Source: Lepidodermella squamata
Lineage: Eukaryota > Animalia > Gastrotricha
Direction of reading: 5' to 3'
Assembly (NCBI GenBank): GCA_047495785.1
Contig: JBLDXI010000013.1
Span: 3,720,001 to 3,784,000, forward strand
Length of the DNA: 64,000 nucleotides
Part shown: in pieces, positions 20,786 to 50,053 of the stretch
Numbering within the stretch: the stretch's first letter is position 1
How the letters are laid out: every line of letters begins with the position of its first letter
Translations under genes and position numbers: made by a program
Notes under the pieces: model-generated
What the model saw: the letters and a program-made list of their open reading frames with translations, nothing else
Database searches by the model: none
Told to the model about the DNA's origin: nothing

Positions 20786-23615
20786 ATGAACAAAAGTACC
20801 GCCAAAGTAGATGCCGATTTTAATGATCGTCTTTCATTTGTTTGGCAACGATGTGAGCATTTGCTGACAACAAATCTTTCACTGTCGAAGGGAGGCCTGG
20901 GTAATCACCTTGTTGCGAGAAATTTGATTACCTTCGGCGATTTCAATCTCCTTCAATCAATAGTATGTGTGATTTGTAATCTTAGAATTCATATTTCATT
21001 TCCCTTTTTATATAGGTGGAAATAAGCGTTGATGAAAGGACCAGGTTTCTATTCGAAAAATTGCTCTTCATGAATTGTGACCGGCGACGTTGGGGGGATA
21101 TAATAGGTGCTATACGAGATTCGGGTTCAAATAATGTTGCTGACGAGCTTGTTAGGCATTTCAATGAATTCGATAAAGATTTGTTGGGTTCTGAGAGGTA
21201 GGACCAAGAATTGAATGAATGACCAGCTCAGCTTTCATCTTTCAGTGACACAAAAATTTTCGGCCACATTCCCGATCTCAAAGATGACGATTGTCCATGT
21301 TCCTATGAAAATGAACGTCTGCTGCAACAGAGCTTCTTGCAACTATGCAAATCCTCAAATAACGGTTGGTTTTTGTATTCTAAACGAGATACATTTTTAA
21401 TCGGTTTTCAATCATTCTAGGCGTTTTATTAGTAGATTCTGCTTTGAACCTCGGCAAAACTGCTTTGATAATCGTTCAAGGCGTCGCTCTCAATCATCAG
21501 TTTCTGAAAAACCAATGCAACATAGACACTGTTGTTTGGCTCCACGTCTGCCGCTACTTTGACCGCGGAGTTTTCGATGATGCCAAGTTTCAGCGCGACC
21601 TAGCTGACATCCTCGAGATAAATTGCGATGAACGGAATGGCAAATCAAGTCGGGAAATTAATTTCCATTTCAAGCATCAGGAATCTTTCCATTCGTATCT
21701 TGTGGTTTTGGAACACTCTTTGCGGCCAGATGTTGTAAAAAACGTCCAGCCATTGATGGGGCAAAAAACTAAAATGATTATTTCTTCGGAAGGAGGAATG
21801 GCTTTCTCCCTTTCCCCGGAACACGCGCTAGTCAAATTATCCAACCGCAGCGACGAATTTAATCCTCCGCAAGATTTCCGCTCCATTTTTACTGAAAACG
21901 TTGCCGTAAAGGAAAAGTCTTTCGCTTTTCTTATATTCGAAAAGGCTACGGCAGTTTGTATTGAAGACTTGGAAATATTATGGCAATGCCCAGCAGATCA
22001 AGCTCTTGAATTCCTAGCTCTGTTAGAACGATCGCGTGTTGTTACGAAGACTTATAGCAATCAAAGTTTCATCATGGACTGTTCCGCTTACGAAGCTCTT
22101 TCGAATTTCACCATTGATGTGGAGAAACTTGGGCAAAGCATTCATGACTTGCGGTCGCGATTGATGTTAGTCATCAAGAACGCTGCTGGAGAAAACGTTC
22201 TACATCAAGCTGTGAGGAATAGCCGAAAAGCTCTGATAGAAGCAATTTTTCAGACTTTTCACGCTTATCCCAATCTTGGTCTTGTTCAGCTTTCAACTGA
22301 GCAAACCAGCGAAGGCGAAACTGCGTTGCATTACCTTCACAGAATTGAAATTCTGAAACATGAAAGTACTCAATCCCAAGAAAGCTTGACTTACACTCGA
22401 CTCTGTAGAACGGTGGACAAATTACTGGCAACAGAAGGCGGGAGATCAATCTTCAGCATCAAAAACGCTCAGAAGAAAACTATTATGCACCTTCTTCAGA
22501 GTGACGTTCTCACAGCAAAAGTCTGGTACCGGAATGCGTTGTTGATTTCTGCAGCTTATGGGTTCGAAAAGTTGGCCGAGGTTCTTCTCGATGTCGGAGT
22601 GATCAGCAATGAAATCAATGCAATTAAAGATCGTCAAGGGAACTCTGCTATGCTCTTGGCTACGATCAATAAGCAAACAATGGTAGTTGAGCATCTATTG
22701 CGGAAATGTCCCAATATTCACGTCAACGATCAAAATCGCTTGCAAGATACGGCCTTATTAATCGCGGTTCGAGATGGCTCGACTGAAATTGTTAAATTGC
22801 TATTGAAGTCGAAAGATATTGACCTATCAGCTAAGACCAGCCGAAACTGCAATCTGTCTTTGTTCGATTACAACTCATCCAGCCGGAATTGTGGTGTCAG
22901 CGCAATGGCTATGGCTGTGATTCATTGTAATCCTGAAATAGCTGAGTTGTTGGTTCAAGCTGGGGCGGCATTGGAGCCTTACGAAGCGAGAGGTCTGCTG
23001 ACTATGGGTCACGTCAGAGTGAACAGAAAAATCTGCGATTTGGTGCGCACTTCCATGACCAAAGGATCAAATGGAGATTTCTCGCCTACTACAGAAAGGA
23101 AGTCGTCCATCACTTCAAGTACTTTATTACTAACACCTCCTATCGTAAGGTCCAAATCAATACCCAGGAGCCTTGAATGCAAAGAAACGATCAAAGTGAT
23201 TAGTCATATCGATGGAAGGTATGACATAGTAAATAGCGCTGATGAAAAGCTGGTTTCCTTCACAATCAGCCCTATTTTGGATCAAAGACCTCTTTACTCA
23301 TCTAGCCAAGATTTATTCCTGGCATCAACTGCCGAAATTGGTGCCTTAGCACCTTTGATGTTTGCTGCTCTCAAAGGAAACACGTCTCTCAGCACCCTTT
23401 TCCTCTCAAAAAGGACTCTGCCGCGATTTAACAACAGCCTTTTGATAACCCTGCCAAAGAAAGGCCAAATAATCTTGAGCCAAGAAACAAAGGACATCAA
23501 GGACGAAGTTAGCCCATCATCATCGAGCAGCTCGAAACAAATAGCCGTTGCAACGGTGGCTCTTGCAGCCGGTACCTCGATAGCTTTCATTTTAAATCGA
23601 ATAAAATTTTACTAG
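20786..23615 (+). CDS. Apaf-1/CED-4-like protein: CARD-like + degenerate NB-ARC + ankyrin repeats + C-terminal TM anchor (4 exons, 890 aa)
   Basis: Exons 20786-20962, 21016-21197, 21246-21364 and 21421-23615 join in frame via GT-AG. Ankyrin motifs (GENVLHQAV, GNSAMLLA, DTALLIAV) are clear. P-loop-like LLVDSALNLGKTAL, VVWLHV, YLVVLEH, KMIISS. Confidence 0.8.
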
Positions 23616-23696
23616 TCGCAACAAATTATCAAAATATATTTAATGAGGAAGCAATAAAAACACAATGAAGGATGAAGGATGAGGTATGTTGTGTCA

Positions 23697-24474
23697 TCAT
23701 GGGAACCAGCGGTCGAAGAAGAAACGAACTCCAGGGCGGAAGTTATCGCGGCACGCCATACAGTCTGCAACTAGAGCTAAGATCAGGGCTCGAAGGCCGA
23801 GAAGAGCCGCGGAGATTATTGCCAACATGTTAGCACAGCCAAAGGCGCCGCAGGTTCCAATTGGGCCACTGTAAGCTGCACCGGCTTTTATTAGGCTAGC
23901 TACGAAGACGCAATAGGTCACAACACTTGCCAGGATGCTTATTGCAGTAGCTAGAAAGACATCAAATGAGAAAGTGCTTGGTCAAACGTTGCAGTAGCTT
24001 ACCAACTCCGACATTGAGTAAGTCATAACACTTCGGGGTGAAGATAAAGTAAGCCGCGGCGTAGAATAAGGTCTCGGCTGCGGAGACAATGGTACTTAAA
24101 AGAAAAGCAGAATGGAAGTCGTCGCGCTCCCCGCGGTAAAGTAGTTCGTTCGGAGCCTCTTCCGAAGAAATGTAGATCAGGATCAATCCACAGCCGCTGC
24201 TTGTTAGAATTAGAATGCTGAACATTAGGGCTGACAAAGTCGCAATGCTTCTGTATAATTCGGCTTTTCGTTGTAGATGAGTTTGTACCACTGGGCGTTC
24301 CTCTACAATAATGGCGGGCTGAGCGGCCTTGGTTTGTTGATAGAGGTCGTTGCCAGCTGTAACTGTTACAGATGCAGCTGAGGATCGCTGGGATGAGCTA
24401 TTGCCCCATGTATCTGCAATGCCCACGTTGCTATCAAGCAGTTGAACAATCGAAATTCTTGGGCCTGAATCCAT
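23697..24474 (-). CDS. Small multi-pass membrane protein, divergent family copy 7
   Basis: RGERDDFHSAFLLSTIVSAAE and CGAFGCANMLAII..GLR..CMAC match the family motifs; 2 exons. Confidence 0.7.
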
Positions 24475-25113: not shown

Positions 25114-28100
25114 TCATAACGCATGGTTTTGCAAAGCGAAAACGAGTGAAGTCACTGTGAGGATAACAGCAATTATCCTTGAATCGCAGGTGTTTATCGA
25201 GGTCGAGCTGACAGAAGAATCTTTCTGGCAAACTCCGTTGGTATTGCAAAATGCCATAGCGCCTAAACTTGGGGATCTGCAATTCATGTCGCCGTAACAC
25301 TTCGAACCAACGGTATCTACGGAATATCAGAAAATCAGCTGAAAAGTTGGGATTGTAGCGAATTTTCAATTACTTTCGATGCAAGTTGTAGTTCCGTTAG
25401 TTGAGGTTTGTTCGACATGGGAAGGCGCGCAGTGGCATGTGTCTTCGTCAGCTTCGTCCAATCGTTTTAGATCGCAAGGATCGCCGCAGACGAGGCCTAA
25501 ACTACCGTCGCAAACTGAATCGAGAATAGGAACACGAGCTTTCGTGCAAACGTCTCCAAATTTTAGTGCTGTTGTAGCAAAAAACCGCTGAAGTTACGGA
25601 GCATTGCTATACAAGAAAACTTACGTTTCCCACATCTATCAGCTTGGAAATTTCTCACGTGACCTCTTTGACTGCAACGGCAAACTGAAATATCGGAATT
25701 CAAACATAAAAATGATAAAAAAGATCTCTCTCGAGCTACCTCATCTTTTGAAATAGCAATTAAAATTACCCATCGATAAATCATTTTTTGGCATTTTTTC
25801 CGAATTTTCCTTAAATTTCGAATATTTTATTCATTTTAATTTATTTCGAGAACGCATTCTAAAACTTTTATAATATTACATACAGATCACCCTATTATAC
25901 TGTGTGTCCCATTATTATATTTTCATTTTTCCACAAATACATGCGGTCTACATATTTTCATGCTTTAAAGAGACCAAATTCAAGCCAAAATTTATTCGAT
26001 ACTTTGGCAACTTTGGAAACCTTGGAAATATTCGTTTCTGCTTGCATAACCATCAATATTGGCTTCCTGAACTTCGGAAAATCGATCATTTGTAAAATCG
26101 ATCTTGGAATCGATATCGGCCAATGTTCACAGTATTATTTCCTATAACAGCCCGGGCTAGTAAAATTTTAACCGCGAAATATTGAAATATTCGAAAGTTA
26201 ATTGTTAAGAATCGCCATTTTTACGTGTTTTCAAACCGACTTGACCTCTCAAGGCTGGGCTGCTACTAGGGATGGGCGCCGTGAATTTAGCGACAGGGCT
26301 GCTATTGGAGCAAATACGGTAATTGGTAAACAGCGAAAAGTGTCCAGTAGCGAAATGTGAGATCTATCGGTTATAGGCATAAAAAAAATGAAGATTCGAA
26401 GAAAAATTTGCGCCTCGAAAAACCATGAGAAATCTATTGCTGGAGGCTCAAAAAACCGATGAAATTCCGATGGTAAAAGTTTTTGGAAAATGCTGCTTTT
26501 TTACCCGGTTTGACCCAATTTCTCAAAATCCTTTCATTTCTGTTAAAGATTCGATAATTTTTGAAATTTCTCTTGCCATAAGATGGGACAGCATCGCCTT
26601 TCATTTTAAGCTTTTAGGTCCTTTTTCAGTGTTTTCCTTGGTTGGAGTACTCAGGGACCTAGGATGCTAAGTAAGTAAAAATTCGGGAAATGTTCGTTTT
26701 TCACTTTTGAAGTCCAATTTTCATGGAATTATTCGAAATTTCTCACCGAAAAAGTCATCGCATTCAACTGCGCTGCCGCCAAGCTGCGGGCAGTGACTAT
26801 CGCTGACGCATTTATCCGCCGCGTTGTCGATCCGCCTCAACTGGCATATCGGCACCTTTGCCGAGAAGAACGCCGAGTCGGAAAAATCGTTCGATAACAC
26901 GGTTTGATAACCAGGCGGGCAGTCGCAATGCGGCACCAGCGTGTTGATAGGGTCGATTAGAAGTGACGGCCGCATCACGTGACTCATGGGCATGCCGGGT
27001 GTTCGCACTTGCGTTAGGCAGTACTTCGACATGCTATCGGTGGAGCTTTCACTCGGGAAGCCGGTGAGTTCGGGTGCGCACACTTCGCCGTGGAACCGGG
27101 AGACGGTGCCGTTTATGCACCTGCAGACACCCTCGTCGCAGTATGAGTTATTGGCGGCACAGACGCCGACGTCGAGGTCCTGCGAGCAGAAATCACCCAC
27201 TCGCTTTACTGAAATGAAAAATTGTCAGATTTCAAGAAAGTATAAACAAATGCCCGCAATTATAATCTTAGGTTTATAATGCATTCATGGTTGAAATGGT
27301 CCCAGAGAACTAAATGCGATCTGATTGGAAATCGGCCTCTATGGTGGCTTTCACAACTTATTGCCGCTGTTATAACGAGAATTCTAATGAAGTTCGTCAT
27401 CATGCTAAGCTTTGATTCCTTATCAGCTAACCCATTTCACTTCAAGCCTAGCCGTTTTGGATTTTTCAAAGCGAAAAAATCACTGGGCCGATTTTCTATC
27501 TTACCACATGCATACCCTTTCGCCACCCGAATTTGCAAAAATGCCGCCGTTTTCCAACGAAACTTTGATTTTATATTGCTTCGAATTTTTTATTTGATTT
27601 AGAGAATCCATGATTTATGGGCTGAATTATAAGAAATCACTGGCCCACAGAGACAGCTAAACAGGACAGGACAGGATCCCACTTTTACCGCAGAAAAATT
27701 CAAAAGCTCAAAATATTGGAGACATAAATAACGTTCTATTGGAAAAATAGAAAATAAGTGTTATGTAAATCTTGAATTACCGTAAATACCGAAATAGGAG
27801 TGTAGGATCACAACTCATCTACAATTTCGGGAACAGATTTGAAGCGATCTCGGTGGACTAAGCCTTTGTTTTCATAAATTGCCTTCGTAAAAATGTAGGA
27901 CGGTGCCTAATAACTCGGTATTTACAGTATACTCCGGGCTCTGAATTTCTGTAGAGCACATTTTTGTAAACTAAAGCTTTTAGAGCACATTTTTGTAAAC
28001 TAAAGCTTTTCCAAAATTGGCAAAATACAGATAGTAGAATCCATTAAAATCCATAGTGAACGAGGACATTACTCAGGTTTTTCCACGCTATGAAAATAAT

Positions 28101-48900: not shown

Positions 48901-50053
48901 GCGGTTAAAATCGGCGTCAACTTTTCAATAGCTCGCGTATGGAATGCCAGTTCCAATACGATAGCTTCAGTCAACACTTTCTAATAATTATTCAACAAAA
49001 TTAAAAATTAATGAAATTTTTTAAATTTCAACCTTGAGTTGCTGCAATTTTGTCCGCTCAAAATTAATTAATTCAGACTCGCTTTTATTTTGAGCAGCCA
49101 ATGCGTCAAGGCTGCCAGATTGTTTATTCAAAGATGTTTCCGCTTGTTTCTGAAAAAAAAATATTAGAATACTTAATATAATCGATATTTTAGATTTGAA
49201 ATCCCTACCGTAGTTAATTTTGATTCGCTGCCAGAAAAACTTCGCCGCAGACTTTTCGCATCTTTACAGTCGTTTGAAAGCTTGAGGAAAAGTGGAATGA
49301 CGCTGCTCTCGATTTGGCCCAATTTAGCCTGGCGGTAGTCCTGAGTAGACACAAGGTACTTGGCCATAGATTCCATCGCGTTTTTCGTCGTAGGGCTGTA
49401 CATGTGCGGCCCACGAGCGAATTCAACGTTGATTTTCGCAACATCGTCAACTGAAATTTAGAATAAATATACAGTGTTGGAACGTTAAAACAATGCATGA
49501 AGCTACATTAGCTATTCAAAATGTGGTTCCTATGCGAAATGTGCTTACTTTAGTACCTATAGAGCTCTTATCAACTTGTTTTTTTACTTGTACATGAGTG
49601 CTGGTATTTAATTACTGATGTGTTCGGCTCAGTAGCTTAGTGGTAGAGCGTCTGCCTAGTAAGCAGAAGATCGAGGGTTCGATCCCCCCCTGAGCCTAAC
49701 CGAAATTATTTTTATTTTTTTATTCTTTTATTTTCGTATAGACCAACTCGGCTCTTTAATTATGTTCAAGTTTATATAATTTTTTTAATTCTTCGATTGT
49801 TAATTCCATCTCTTTCAGCGCATAATGCAAATGTTTGCATATTCACTTGATTTTTTTCATTATGAATATAAGGCTTACAGGCATCTCGAAGTCCAGCTTC
49901 TTTCCTGGCTATCGTTGAAAAAGCCCCAGTCATCGATTCCAAATATTTCTCAAAATTCGACAATGCATGCTGGGCATTGCTGAAAAATTCGAAAAAATAT
50001 TTAAAAAAACTACAAAATAAGGAATTAACTTACGCGGGAGGTTGAAGAGGCAT
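45912..50053 (-). CDS. FAM92: FAM92/CIBAR BAR-domain protein (about 6 exons; acidic and Pro/Gly-rich last exon 45912-46199)
   Basis: NFEKYL..IARKEAGLRD, QDYRQAKLGQIE, FERTKLQQLK, ELAFHTRAIE..INIEADLAEY match FAM92 hallmarks; the last intron 46200-48611 joins in phase 0. Confidence 0.8.
46628..48510 (+). pseudogene. Decayed gene or transposon remnant nested antisense in the FAM92 intron
   Basis: Higher-GC coding-like tract with broken ORFs (46639, 46883, 47430, 48190) in an unusually long 2.4 kb intron; family not recognised. Confidence 0.35.
49626..49697 (+). tRNA. tRNA-Thr (anticodon AGT)
   Basis: Acceptor stem GGCTCAG/CTGAGCC, D arm GCTTAGTGGTAGAGC, anticodon arm TCTGC-CTAGTAA-GCAGA, T loop TTCGATC, downstream T-runs. 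Confidence 0.93.

What the first reader, a model, noticed from the sequence alone, without database searches (positions are those of the whole stretch)
20786..23615. Apaf-1-like protein with an ankyrin sensor and a tail anchor (CARD - NB-ARC - ANK - TM)
Seen after manual splicing: a ~110 aa helical death-fold-like N-terminus (HLVARNLITFGDFNLLQS..ERTRFLFEKLL..IIGAIRDSGSNNVADEL), then IFGHIP..LLQQSF, LLVDSALNLGKTAL..ALNHQFLKNQC..VVWLHV, paralleling the Apaf-1 Walker A region. Next come a Walker-B-like YLVVLEH, a winged-helix-like LW..ALEFLALLERSRVV..FIMD, about 8 ankyrin repeats instead of WD40/LRR, and a terminal IAVATVALAAGTSIAFIL-NRIKFY. A moderately hydrophobic TM followed by basic residues is typical of mitochondrial-outer-membrane tail anchors. 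Walker motifs are degenerate. Inference: a membrane-tethered apoptosome or NLR-like immune receptor, or a decoy. The ORF track shows only the last exon as a long ORF.
Basis: partly seen in the sequence, partly recalled or inferred. Interest (0 to 1): 0.82.

Follow-up and report, generated by a model that had tools for sequence, protein, structure and literature searches.

The report
Tail-anchored ankyrin protein with degenerate STAND-like core
This is a real, spliced and conserved animal gene for an 890-residue protein that has ankyrin repeats, a membrane anchor at its very end and probably a worn-down Apaf-1/NLR-type switch domain. The proposed death-fold (CARD) head and any apoptosome role are not shown.

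Summary
The four-exon model (20786-20962, 21016-21197, 21246-21364, 21421-23615, + strand) gives an 890-aa ORF. All three GT..AG introns (53, 48 and 56 nt) are removed in contigs of one probable RNA run and not in the DNA run. Haplotype differences are mostly synonymous (25:13), so the gene is under selection.

- **Ankyrin repeats:** confirmed by Pfam, about 7 in all, 4 of them folded with confidence.
- **Tail anchor:** confirmed as a sequence feature. One 18-residue hydrophobic segment (867-884) is followed by NRIKFY. ER or mitochondria cannot be decided.
- **NB-ARC:** only partly supported. Pfam, NCBIfam, PADLOC, PDB and two very large protein searches found nothing, and AlphaFold2 without relatives failed. 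Language-model neighbours are NB-ARC/NACHT/nSTAND clusters (0.93). A home-made NB-ARC profile aligns the segments in the right order but weakly. GKT is kept; Walker B is EH, sensor 1 is SSE, MHD is IMD, and the ARC1/GLPL subdomain is missing.
- **CARD:** There is only a faint lead.

The scan has already noted many NB-ARC-ankyrin genes elsewhere in this genome. This looks like a very divergent, shortened, membrane-anchored one.

The parts
20786..20962 (+). Exon 1 (residues 1-59), start ATG at 20786. It encodes the first half of the N-terminal domain.
   Evidence: Frame and GT donor at 20963. The joint 20962>21016 is seen in an X1 contig. An in-frame TAG lies 4 codons upstream.
20963..21015 (+). 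Intron 1, 53 nt, GT..AG
21016..21197 (+). Exon 2 (residues 60-120). It encodes the second half of the N-terminal domain, the putative but unproven death fold.
   Evidence: No Pfam, NCBIfam, PDB or atlas hit on this piece.
21198..21245 (+). Intron 2, 48 nt, GT..AG
   Evidence: joint reported as 21195>21244, cut +2
21246..21364 (+). Exon 3 (residues 120-160): an acidic, Cys-containing linker and the segment before the P-loop strand.
21365..21420 (+). Intron 3, 56 nt, GT..AG
   Evidence: joint reported as 21363>21420, cut +1
21421..23615 (+). Exon 4 (residues 160-890 plus stop TAG at 23613-23615)
   Evidence: Long ORF. X1 contigs run through the stop codon without a joint.
21423..22142 (+). STAND-like NTPase region (residues 161-400): a nucleotide-binding domain followed directly by a winged-helix-like segment, with no ARC1/HD1.
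   Evidence: Atlas neighbours are NB-ARC/NACHT/nSTAND at 0.93, with 197 of 256 features shared. Alignments to the NB-ARC profile are colinear but weak. Among the listed haplotype differences in this region, 18 are synonymous and 4 are not.
21438..21461 (+). Walker A-like P-loop SALNLGKT (residues 166-173). Lys172 and Thr173 are kept; the first Gly is replaced by Ser.
   Evidence: Read directly from the sequence
21696..21716 (+). Walker B-like strand YLVVLEH (residues 252-258). E-H stands where NB-ARC has D-D or D-N.
   Evidence: Aligned to LlvlDN of the NB-ARC profile
21774..21791 (+). Sensor-1-like strand MIISSE (residues 278-283). By spacing, Glu stands where the profile has the invariant Arg of T-S-R.
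   Evidence: MIISS is aligned to vlvTS. The Arg is invariant in the 25 verified NB-ARC domains.
21915..22082 (+). Winged-helix-like segment (residues 325-380), ending in F-I-M-D (376-379) at the MHD position. His is replaced by Met.
   Evidence: This is the best local match to the NB-ARC profile in hmmsearch and hhalign. The WHD sub-profile scores 4.8 bits, reached by 7 of 2000 shuffles.
22185..23072 (+). Ankyrin-repeat region (residues about 415-710): about 7 helix pairs and a long capping helix. The Pfam-supported core is residues 512-675 (22476-22967).
   Evidence: Pfam Ank_2, Ank_3, Ank, Ank_4 and Ank_5. In the AlphaFold2 model, pLDDT is 75-97 over exon-4 residues 370-530.
23307..23408 (+). 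Isolated helix pair (residues 789-822), ankyrin-like, inside an otherwise low-confidence linker.
   Evidence: AlphaFold2 helices 629-650 and 654-662 in exon-4 numbering, pLDDT up to 88
23541..23594 (+). Transmembrane segment IAVATVALAAGTSIAFIL (residues 867-884)
   Evidence: Highest hydropathy window of the protein, mean Kyte-Doolittle 2.25. Codons read.
23595..23612 (+). Six-residue tail NRIKFY after the TMD, net charge +2
   Evidence: One haplotype has I887L.
23653..23658 (+). Candidate poly(A) signal AATAAA, 38 nt after the stop. Another AATAAA lies at 23600-23605 inside the CDS.
   Evidence: Sequence only. Not verified.

Best explanation
The locus encodes an 890-residue cytosol-facing protein held on an organelle membrane by a C-terminal tail anchor. 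From N to C it has:
- a roughly 118-residue domain of unproven fold;
- a short acidic, Cys-containing linker;
- a very divergent, shortened STAND (NB-ARC-like) module, made of a P-loop domain followed directly by a winged-helix segment;
- about 7 ankyrin repeats;
- a roughly 150-residue, mostly low-confidence Ser-rich linker;
- one TMD.

The P-loop Lys-Thr is kept. The Walker B acidic pair, the sensor-1 Arg, the MHD His and the whole ARC1/GLPL subdomain are replaced or missing. The most likely mode of action (inferred, not shown) is therefore a nucleotide-binding but poorly hydrolysing, or nucleotide-independent, scaffold. The ankyrin array would bind a partner or ligand at the membrane surface, and the N-terminal domain would pass on or block a signal. 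On this view it is a membrane-tethered regulatory or decoy member of the lineage-specific NB-ARC-ankyrin expansion of this genome, not an ATP-driven Apaf-1-type apoptosome.
For: Gene and expression:
- Spliced model.
- All three introns are removed in X1 contigs and not in the DNA run X2.
- 25 synonymous against 13 non-synonymous haplotype differences, pN/pS about 0.15. In the NTPase-like region the count is 18:4.

Ankyrin: Pfam E = 8e-18; AlphaFold2 helix pairs with pLDDT 75-97.

Tail anchor: the only strong hydrophobic window is residues 867-884, 6 residues from the end. The N-terminus is not hydrophobic.

STAND-like core:
- ESM-atlas neighbours are NB-ARC/NACHT/nSTAND clusters at 0.93-0.90, with 197 of 256 features shared and recognition 3808. 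Nine of the ten best hits that carry a family share that family or its clan.
- A profile was built from 102 bacterial NB-ARC domains. 25 of 25 checked are PF00931.
- That profile aligns VVWLHV, LVVLEH and MIISS to its RNBS-A Trp strand, Walker B and sensor-1 strands (2.3 bits, reached by 36 of 2000 shuffles).
- It also aligns the ILW..ALEFLALLERS segment to its winged helix (4.8 bits, 7 of 2000). Reversed sequences score below zero.

Context (leads only, not tested here): earlier notes of this scan report many NB-ARC-ankyrin genes in the same genome. One is a four-exon gene ending in a CaaX motif.
Against: - No curated family model (Pfam, NCBIfam, PADLOC) matches the region, even at E <= 10.
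- PDB phmmer gives only chance hits.
- phmmer against 1.84 billion representatives found nothing. Two word searches found nothing.
- Against the NB-ARC profile, whole-domain hmmsearch gives 0.3 bits (61 of 2000 shuffles reach it) and hhalign P is 0.08-0.11.
- With the P-loop held fixed, the NBD score is reached by 152 of 2000 shuffles.
- Both AlphaFold2 models are below pLDDT 50 in this region, so there is no structural evidence.
- The sub-domain tests used segment limits chosen after seeing the alignment. Composition shuffles are a lenient null.
- The scaffold or decoy mechanism is inference from motif loss only.
Confidence: 0.6

Rival explanations
1. It is an orphan tail-anchored ankyrin protein whose N-terminal 400 residues are not a STAND module. 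On this view the GKT tripeptide and the hydrophobic strands are chance, and the region has some other, lineage-specific fold.
For: Every statistical sequence test is null or marginal. Both AlphaFold2 runs give no confident fold there. About 75 residues that every NB-ARC domain has (ARC1 with GLPL) are missing.
Against: The language-model neighbours are consistently NB-ARC/NACHT/nSTAND, with values that the tool says chance hits seldom reach together (0.93, 197 shared features, recognition 3808). The weak profile alignments fall in the correct order and at the expected spacing. The tripartite layout of head, P-loop region and repeat array is that of STAND proteins.
Confidence: 0.2
2. It is a working membrane-tethered apoptosome or MAVS-like adaptor. 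On this view a true CARD at the N-terminus recruits a CARD caspase or kinase, the NB-ARC oligomerises on nucleotide exchange, the ankyrin array senses the trigger, and the tail anchor places the complex on mitochondria.
For: The exon-1 piece has weak language-model neighbours that carry CARD (0.81-0.80; all ten best hits that carry a family are of one family or clan). The P-loop Lys-Thr is retained. The tail has two basic residues after a TMD that contains Gly, Ser and Thr. The whole gene is under purifying selection.
Against: - The tool states that scores under 0.9 are leads only, and that a third of shuffled proteins also get ten hits of one family.
- Exon 2 has no usable hit.
- No CARD, Death, DED or PYD profile and no PDB chain matches either piece.
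- The Walker B acidic pair, the sensor-1 Arg, the MHD His and ARC1 are all changed or missing. This argues against a normal nucleotide switch.
- A GRAVY of 2.25 favours the ER at least as much as mitochondria by PMC5450235.
Confidence: 0.12
3. It is an active NLR-type immune receptor of the genome's NB-ARC-ankyrin family, and its motif changes are tolerated. On this view it still cycles ADP/ATP and signals through its N-terminal domain from a membrane.
For: The family context comes from earlier notes (untested here). The ankyrin array could serve as a sensor. Selection on the NTPase-like region is strong, at 18 synonymous to 4 non-synonymous differences.
Against: Four nucleotide-handling elements are lost together. 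The gene stands alone in this window, with no paralog nearby (tblastn). Clustered, fast-evolving receptor genes usually lie in arrays. pN/pS of about 0.15 shows conservation rather than diversification.
Confidence: 0.08

Closest known systems
Apaf-1 / CED-4 / Dark (animal NB-ARC apoptosome adaptors)
   Same: Order of parts: N-terminal small domain, then a P-loop domain, a winged helix and a repeat array. GK[ST] is retained. A Trp-containing strand follows the P-loop, then a Walker B strand and a sensor-1 strand, all colinear with an NB-ARC profile.
   Different: - No PF00931 match.
- No ARC1/HD1 with GLPL/GxP.
- E-H for the Walker B D-D, Glu for the sensor-1 Arg, Met for the MHD His.
- Ankyrin repeats instead of WD40.
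- Its own tail anchor.
- CARD not shown.
NB-ARC/NACHT-ankyrin NLR-like proteins of fungi and early-branching animals
   Same: A STAND core joined to ankyrin repeats and a variable N-terminal domain. Expansions of NB-ARC genes without LRRs are described in placozoans (PMC6321704), and ankyrin is a usual repeat type in fungal NLRs (listed). Earlier notes of this scan report NB-ARC-ankyrin genes in this same genome.
   Different: This one is much shorter in the NOD region and lacks detectable sequence similarity to any of them. It also ends in a transmembrane tail anchor. A full-text search found no paper that describes a tail-anchored NB-ARC protein.
MAVS (CARD adaptor with a C-terminal tail anchor on mitochondria and peroxisomes)
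   Same: A small N-terminal signalling-type domain and a long linker, ending in a single C-terminal TMD with a short charged tail. The tail decides the organelle (PMC13032619 listed; rules in PMC5450235).
   Different: MAVS has no NTPase or ankyrin part. Here the CARD is not demonstrated, and there is no sequence similarity.
CED-9/Bcl-2-tethered CED-4 (established knowledge, not tested here)
   Same: An NB-ARC adaptor kept at an organelle surface.
   Different: In that system the tether is a separate tail-anchored Bcl-2 protein. Here the anchor is part of the same polypeptide. No BH motifs were looked for.

Membership tests
NB-ARC / STAND NTPase (PF00931; Apaf-1, CED-4, plant R proteins) | Significant match to the curated NB-ARC (or NACHT/nSTAND) profile | tested here: not met
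   No NB-ARC, NACHT or nSTAND hit at E <= 1 on exon 4 or at E <= 10 on residues 161-420. NCBIfam and PADLOC also gave none.
NB-ARC / STAND NTPase | Walker A P-loop GxxxxGK[ST] after a beta strand | tested here: met
   VLLVD-SALNLGKT, residues 161-173. Lys and Thr are kept, and the first Gly is Ser.
NB-ARC / STAND NTPase | Walker B hhhhD[DN] with its acidic residues | tested here: inconclusive
   LVVLEH aligns to LlvlDN. Glu replaces the Asp that is invariant in 25 verified domains, and His follows.
NB-ARC / STAND NTPase | Sensor-1 Arg (hhhT[TS]R) | tested here: not met
   MIISS aligns to vlvTS, and the next residue is Glu283. The Arg is invariant in the reference set.
NB-ARC / STAND NTPase | ARC1/HD1 helical subdomain with the GLPL (GxP) motif | tested here: not met
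   Profile positions about 166-250 have no counterpart. The HD1 sub-profile score is reached by 740 of 2000 shuffles. Only about 40 residues lie between the sensor-1 strand and the winged-helix segment.
NB-ARC / STAND NTPase | ARC2 winged helix ending in the MHD motif | tested here: inconclusive
   This is the best local match in hmmsearch and hhalign. The sub-profile gives 4.8 bits, reached by 7 of 2000 shuffles. The motif reads I-M-D, so the His is lost.
NB-ARC / STAND NTPase | NOD fold similar to solved Apaf-1/CED-4/NLR structures | tested here: inconclusive
   AlphaFold2 without relatives gave pLDDT 36. With an ankyrin-only alignment, the region stays below 50. No fold search was meaningful.
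NB-ARC / STAND NTPase | Language-model neighbourhood among family members | tested here: met
   Top clusters are NB-ARC 91%, NB-ARC 79% with nSTAND3, and nSTAND1 94%. Score 0.93-0.92, 188-197 of 256 features shared.
Death-fold superfamily (CARD/DD/DED/PYD) | Profile match to a death-fold family | tested here: inconclusive
   No hit on the exon pieces. The domain is split between exons 1 and 2 and could only be searched in halves, so the test is weak.
Death-fold superfamily (CARD/DD/DED/PYD) | Six-helix bundle fold | not testable with these tools
   The spliced N-terminus has no reference and could not be handed to the structure tools. The exon-1 atlas lead to CARD clusters is 0.80-0.81, below the tool's 0.9 line. 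Exon 2 gave none.
Ankyrin-repeat proteins | Repeated 33-residue helix-turn-helix units that match Pfam Ank models | tested here: met
   Ank_2 8.4e-18, Ank_3 7.7e-14, Ank 3.3e-11, Ank_4 1.8e-10 and Ank_5 1.1e-6, all above their cut-offs. Four helix pairs have pLDDT 75-97 and about three are more divergent.
Tail-anchored membrane proteins | A single TMD within about 30 residues of the C-terminus, no signal peptide and no other TMD | tested here: met
   TMD 867-884 with a 6-residue tail. The next hydropathy peaks (1.63) lie in the ankyrin-like helix and the P-loop strand. The N-terminus is polar. Membrane insertion itself is untested.
Mitochondrial-outer-membrane tail anchors | Low TMD hydrophobicity combined with a moderately basic tail | tested here: inconclusive
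   GRAVY is 2.25 and tail charge is +2. PMC5450235 puts high GRAVY with the ER (yeast ER > 1.75) and says that tail charge can redirect a protein to mitochondria.
Apaf-1 orthologue | CARD + NB-ARC + HD2 + WD40 propellers | tested here: not met
   No WD40 family was found; the repeat region is ankyrin. No relatives at all were found by sequence.

The most novel reading that the evidence does not exclude
A self-anchored death-signalling platform. A true CARD-like head and a minimal NB-ARC (NBD plus winged helix, without ARC1) would be fused to an ankyrin sensor and to its own tail anchor. One polypeptide would then do at an organelle surface what CED-9 plus CED-4, or MAVS, do with separate parts. 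Together with the CaaX-ending paralog noted elsewhere in this genome, it would define a membrane-tethered branch of animal STAND receptors.
Probability: 0.12. Interest if true: 0.8.

Novelty: new variant of a known kind. Interest (0 to 1): 0.48.

Why it matters
If the core is indeed a cut-down NB-ARC, this protein shows how far a STAND module can be reduced and still be kept by selection. It has lost ARC1, the catalytic acidic pair, the sensor Arg and the MHD His.

It would also show that an animal lineage has joined such a module to ankyrin repeats and a tail anchor. I found no description of that combination. This would help in reading the large NB-ARC-ankyrin expansion of this genome, because some members may act at membranes or as regulators rather than as soluble switches.

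If the core is not a STAND module, the gene is simply an orphan tail-anchored ankyrin protein.

Tried and rejected
Searches that found nothing useful:
- **Whole-exon-4 word search:** only ankyrin-driven hits of 23-35% identity over the repeats. BLASTP of the two length-matched hits showed ankyrin similarity only.
- **Region-limited word searches and exhaustive phmmer of residues 161-420:** nothing, so no alignment could be built for folding.
- **tblastn against plasmids and a metagenome scan:** nothing.
- **PDB phmmer of four sub-segments:** chance hits only (ZAP, LHC, Cro, eIF2B).
- **tblastn of the model against the window:** no paralog in the 64 kb.
- **Pfam on nine neighbouring ORFs:** no caspase, Bcl-2 or NB-ARC neighbour.

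Structure prediction:
- **AlphaFold2 on the single sequence:** pLDDT 36, unusable.
- **AlphaFold2 of exon 4 with an ankyrin alignment:** resolved only the repeats.

Home-made NB-ARC profile:
- It was built from loci fetched with a P-loop DNA pattern and verified by Pfam.
- Whole-domain tests were not significant. Only the sub-domain tests were marginal.

Ideas set aside:
- I rejected folding the query with bacterial NB-ARC rows as its alignment, because the result would reflect the alignment and not the query.
- I did not type the spliced N-terminus, or Apaf-1/CED-4 sequences from memory, into any tool. My remembered motif spacing for Apaf-1 and CED-4 served as a lead only and is not used as evidence.

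The organism could not be named. P0001, the best ankyrin hit, comes from marine metagenomes.
Full report
**1. The observation**

ORF listing and the raw sequence show a long ORF from 21444 to 23615 and three short upstream ORFs in other frames.

Joining 20786-20962, 21016-21197, 21246-21364 and 21421-23615 gives 2673 nt and an 890-residue protein with one stop at the end. The introns are 53, 48 and 56 nt, each GT..AG with a pyrimidine-rich acceptor.

Two public runs hold the stretch.
- In run X1 (labelled RNA only as a guess), contigs skip exactly these three introns.
- In the deeper DNA run X2, no such joint exists.
- X1 contigs cross the stop codon without a further joint.
- X1 depth is zero upstream of about 20842. 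With the in-frame TAG four codons before the ATG, this makes 20786 the likely start.

The support is one run from one study. The 'opposite strands' joints in X1 lie between short contigs of an allele-rich stretch, and I take them for assembly artefacts.

**2. Is the gene under selection?**

Both runs carry a second allele that differs by up to about 8% locally. Of the 38 listed differences inside the CDS, 25 are synonymous and 13 are not. With about 598 synonymous and 2072 non-synonymous sites, pN/pS is about 0.15. In residues 161-400 the count is 18 to 4. The table lists only the best-supported half of the differences, so these are estimates. They still show a working gene, including its odd NTPase-like part.

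**3. Ankyrin array**

Pfam finds Ank_2 (8.4e-18), Ank_3, Ank, Ank_4 and Ank_5 above their cut-offs.

AlphaFold2 of exon 4, with 27 ankyrin proteins as its alignment, gives the following. In exon-4 numbering, add 160 for protein numbering.
- Four canonical helix pairs with pLDDT 75-97: 372-391, 409-428, 444-461 and 494-512.
- About three looser pairs before them (259-358, pLDDT 50-82).
- A long capping helix (519-549).
- One isolated helix pair at 629-662, inside an otherwise low-confidence Ser-rich linker.

'About 8 repeats' is therefore close: I count about 7.

**4. Tail anchor**

The highest hydropathy window of the protein is IAVATVALAAGTSIAFIL (867-884, mean Kyte-Doolittle 2.25), followed by NRIKFY and the stop. 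The N-terminus is polar and no other window comes near. The sequence definition of a tail-anchored protein is met.

The target membrane is open. PMC5450235 shows that TMD hydrophobicity and tail charge act against each other.
- High GRAVY favours the ER (yeast ER proteins are above 1.75).
- A charged tail shifts proteins to mitochondria or peroxisomes.

A GRAVY of 2.25 with a charge of +2 lies between these cases.

**5. The NB-ARC claim**

Curated and database tests are negative.
- No NB-ARC, NACHT or nSTAND model matches in Pfam, NCBIfam or PADLOC.
- No PDB chain matches.
- No relative was found by word search, by exhaustive phmmer against 1.84 billion representatives, by tblastn on plasmids or in metagenome contigs.
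- Without relatives, AlphaFold2 failed (pLDDT 36; still below 50).

The positive evidence is of two kinds.

First, the language-model search places residues 161-420 among NB-ARC/NACHT/nSTAND clusters. The score is 0.93, with 197 of 256 features shared, recognition 3808, and nine of the ten best hits that carry a family sharing that family or its clan. By the tool's own figures, chance hits seldom reach these values together.

Second, I fetched real NB-ARC domains to make a targeted test.
- A DNA pattern for the P-loop GMGG[VI]GKTTLA found 120 bacterial loci.
- 102 uninterrupted 355-residue domains were cut out.
- 25 of 25 checked are PF00931.
- Against the profile of the 102 domains, the whole region scores only 0.3 bits, reached by 61 of 2000 shuffles.
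- hhalign gives P of 0.11 and 0.077.
- The alignments that do appear are in the right order:
  - DTVVWLHV on the Trp strand after the P-loop;
  - YLVVLEH on LlvlDN (Walker B);
  - MIISS on vlvTS (sensor 1);
  - ILWQCPADQALEFLALLERS on the winged helix just before the profile's 'rlHD'.

Sub-profile results:

| Sub-profile | Score | Shuffles reaching it (of 2000) |
|---|---|---|
| NBD | 2.3 bits | 36 |
| Winged helix | 4.8 bits | 7 |
| ARC1/HD1 | no signal | 740 |

Reversed sequences score below zero. With the P-loop held fixed in the shuffles, the NBD score is reached by 152 of 2000.

These tests are marginal. The segment limits were set after seeing the alignment, and composition shuffles are a lenient null. 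Taken with the tripartite layout, I put the odds that this is a STAND-type module at about 3 to 1.

**6. What kind of NB-ARC?**

If the alignment is right, the module is heavily worn.
- The P-loop keeps Lys172-Thr173.
- Walker B reads E-H, where the reference set has an invariant Asp followed by Asn or Asp.
- By spacing, Glu283 stands where the reference set has an invariant Arg.
- The MHD position reads I-M-D.
- The roughly 75-residue ARC1 subdomain with GLPL has no counterpart.

From established knowledge of STAND proteins, these elements bind and sense the nucleotide and drive the ADP/ATP switch. Losing four of them at once argues for a protein that at most binds nucleotide and works as a scaffold, regulator or decoy. 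This step is inference.

**7. The CARD claim**

The presumed domain (residues 1-118) is split between exons 1 and 2, and the spliced sequence has no reference. It could therefore be searched only in halves.
- Neither half matches any Pfam or NCBIfam family or any PDB chain.
- The exon-2 half has no usable language-model neighbour.
- The exon-1 half has neighbours at 0.81-0.80, two of which carry CARD in 17-20% of members. The tool classes this as a lead only.

The death fold is neither shown nor excluded.

**8. Surroundings**

There is no paralog in the window. No neighbouring ORF has a caspase, Bcl-2, TIR or NB-ARC domain. The next gene downstream is convergent and encodes hydrophobic segments.

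**9. Comparison and novelty**

It works like, and probably derives from, NB-ARC-repeat proteins. It fails several membership tests for NB-ARC proper, and it is not an Apaf-1 orthologue.

NB-ARC genes without LRRs are expanded in placozoans (PMC6321704), and ankyrin-bearing NLRs are common in fungi. A full-text search for 'tail-anchored' with 'NB-ARC' found no description of such a protein. MAVS is the nearest analogue for a small signalling head on a tail anchor.

Earlier notes of this scan list 43 NB-ARC findings in this same genome. They include a CARD-like NB-ARC-ankyrin gene with a broken nucleotide loop and a four-exon NB-ARC-ankyrin gene ending in CaaX. I could not fetch those genes, so kinship with them is untested. 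They do make this locus one more member of a kind already seen here, and a very divergent one.

**10. Verdict**

This is a real, expressed and conserved gene. The ankyrin array and the tail anchor are confirmed. A degenerate STAND-like core is probable. The CARD and the apoptosome role are unproven. I class it as a new variant of a known kind, of moderate interest.

Noticed in passing
window 21471-23550: Both public runs carry a second allele of this gene that differs by up to about 8% over stretches of 170-510 nt. One example is 17 differences in the 220 nt from 21629 to 21848. DNA depth there splits roughly 77 to 50. The organism is therefore highly heterozygous, or the sample is mixed.
   Followed up: partly
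window 23697-24474 (- strand): A convergent downstream gene has two ORFs (23962-24474 and 23697-23921) that encode several hydrophobic, Cys-containing segments and have no Pfam match.
   Followed up: partly
window 26724-27200 (- strand): An ORF gives a sub-threshold Pfam hit to the EB module (E 0.0088, 16.5 bits against a cut-off of 24.3). From memory, this is a Cys-rich module known mainly from nematode proteins.
   Followed up: no
L001:1014-3662 and L001:5427-5810: The best ankyrin-only hit (P0001, 882 aa, all ankyrin repeats) is encoded without introns on marine-metagenome contigs, next to a small CUB-domain gene. Several other hits combine CUB and LDLa domains with ankyrin repeats (P0004, P0008, P0015).
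   Followed up: no
window 21684-23464: Run X1 shows five 'opposite strands' joints inside exon 4, between short contigs of an allele-rich stretch. I take them for assembly artefacts of the contig set, not for real rearrangements.
   Followed up: no
window 49626-49697 (+): A single tRNA gene is the only Rfam match in the 64 kb window.
   Followed up: no
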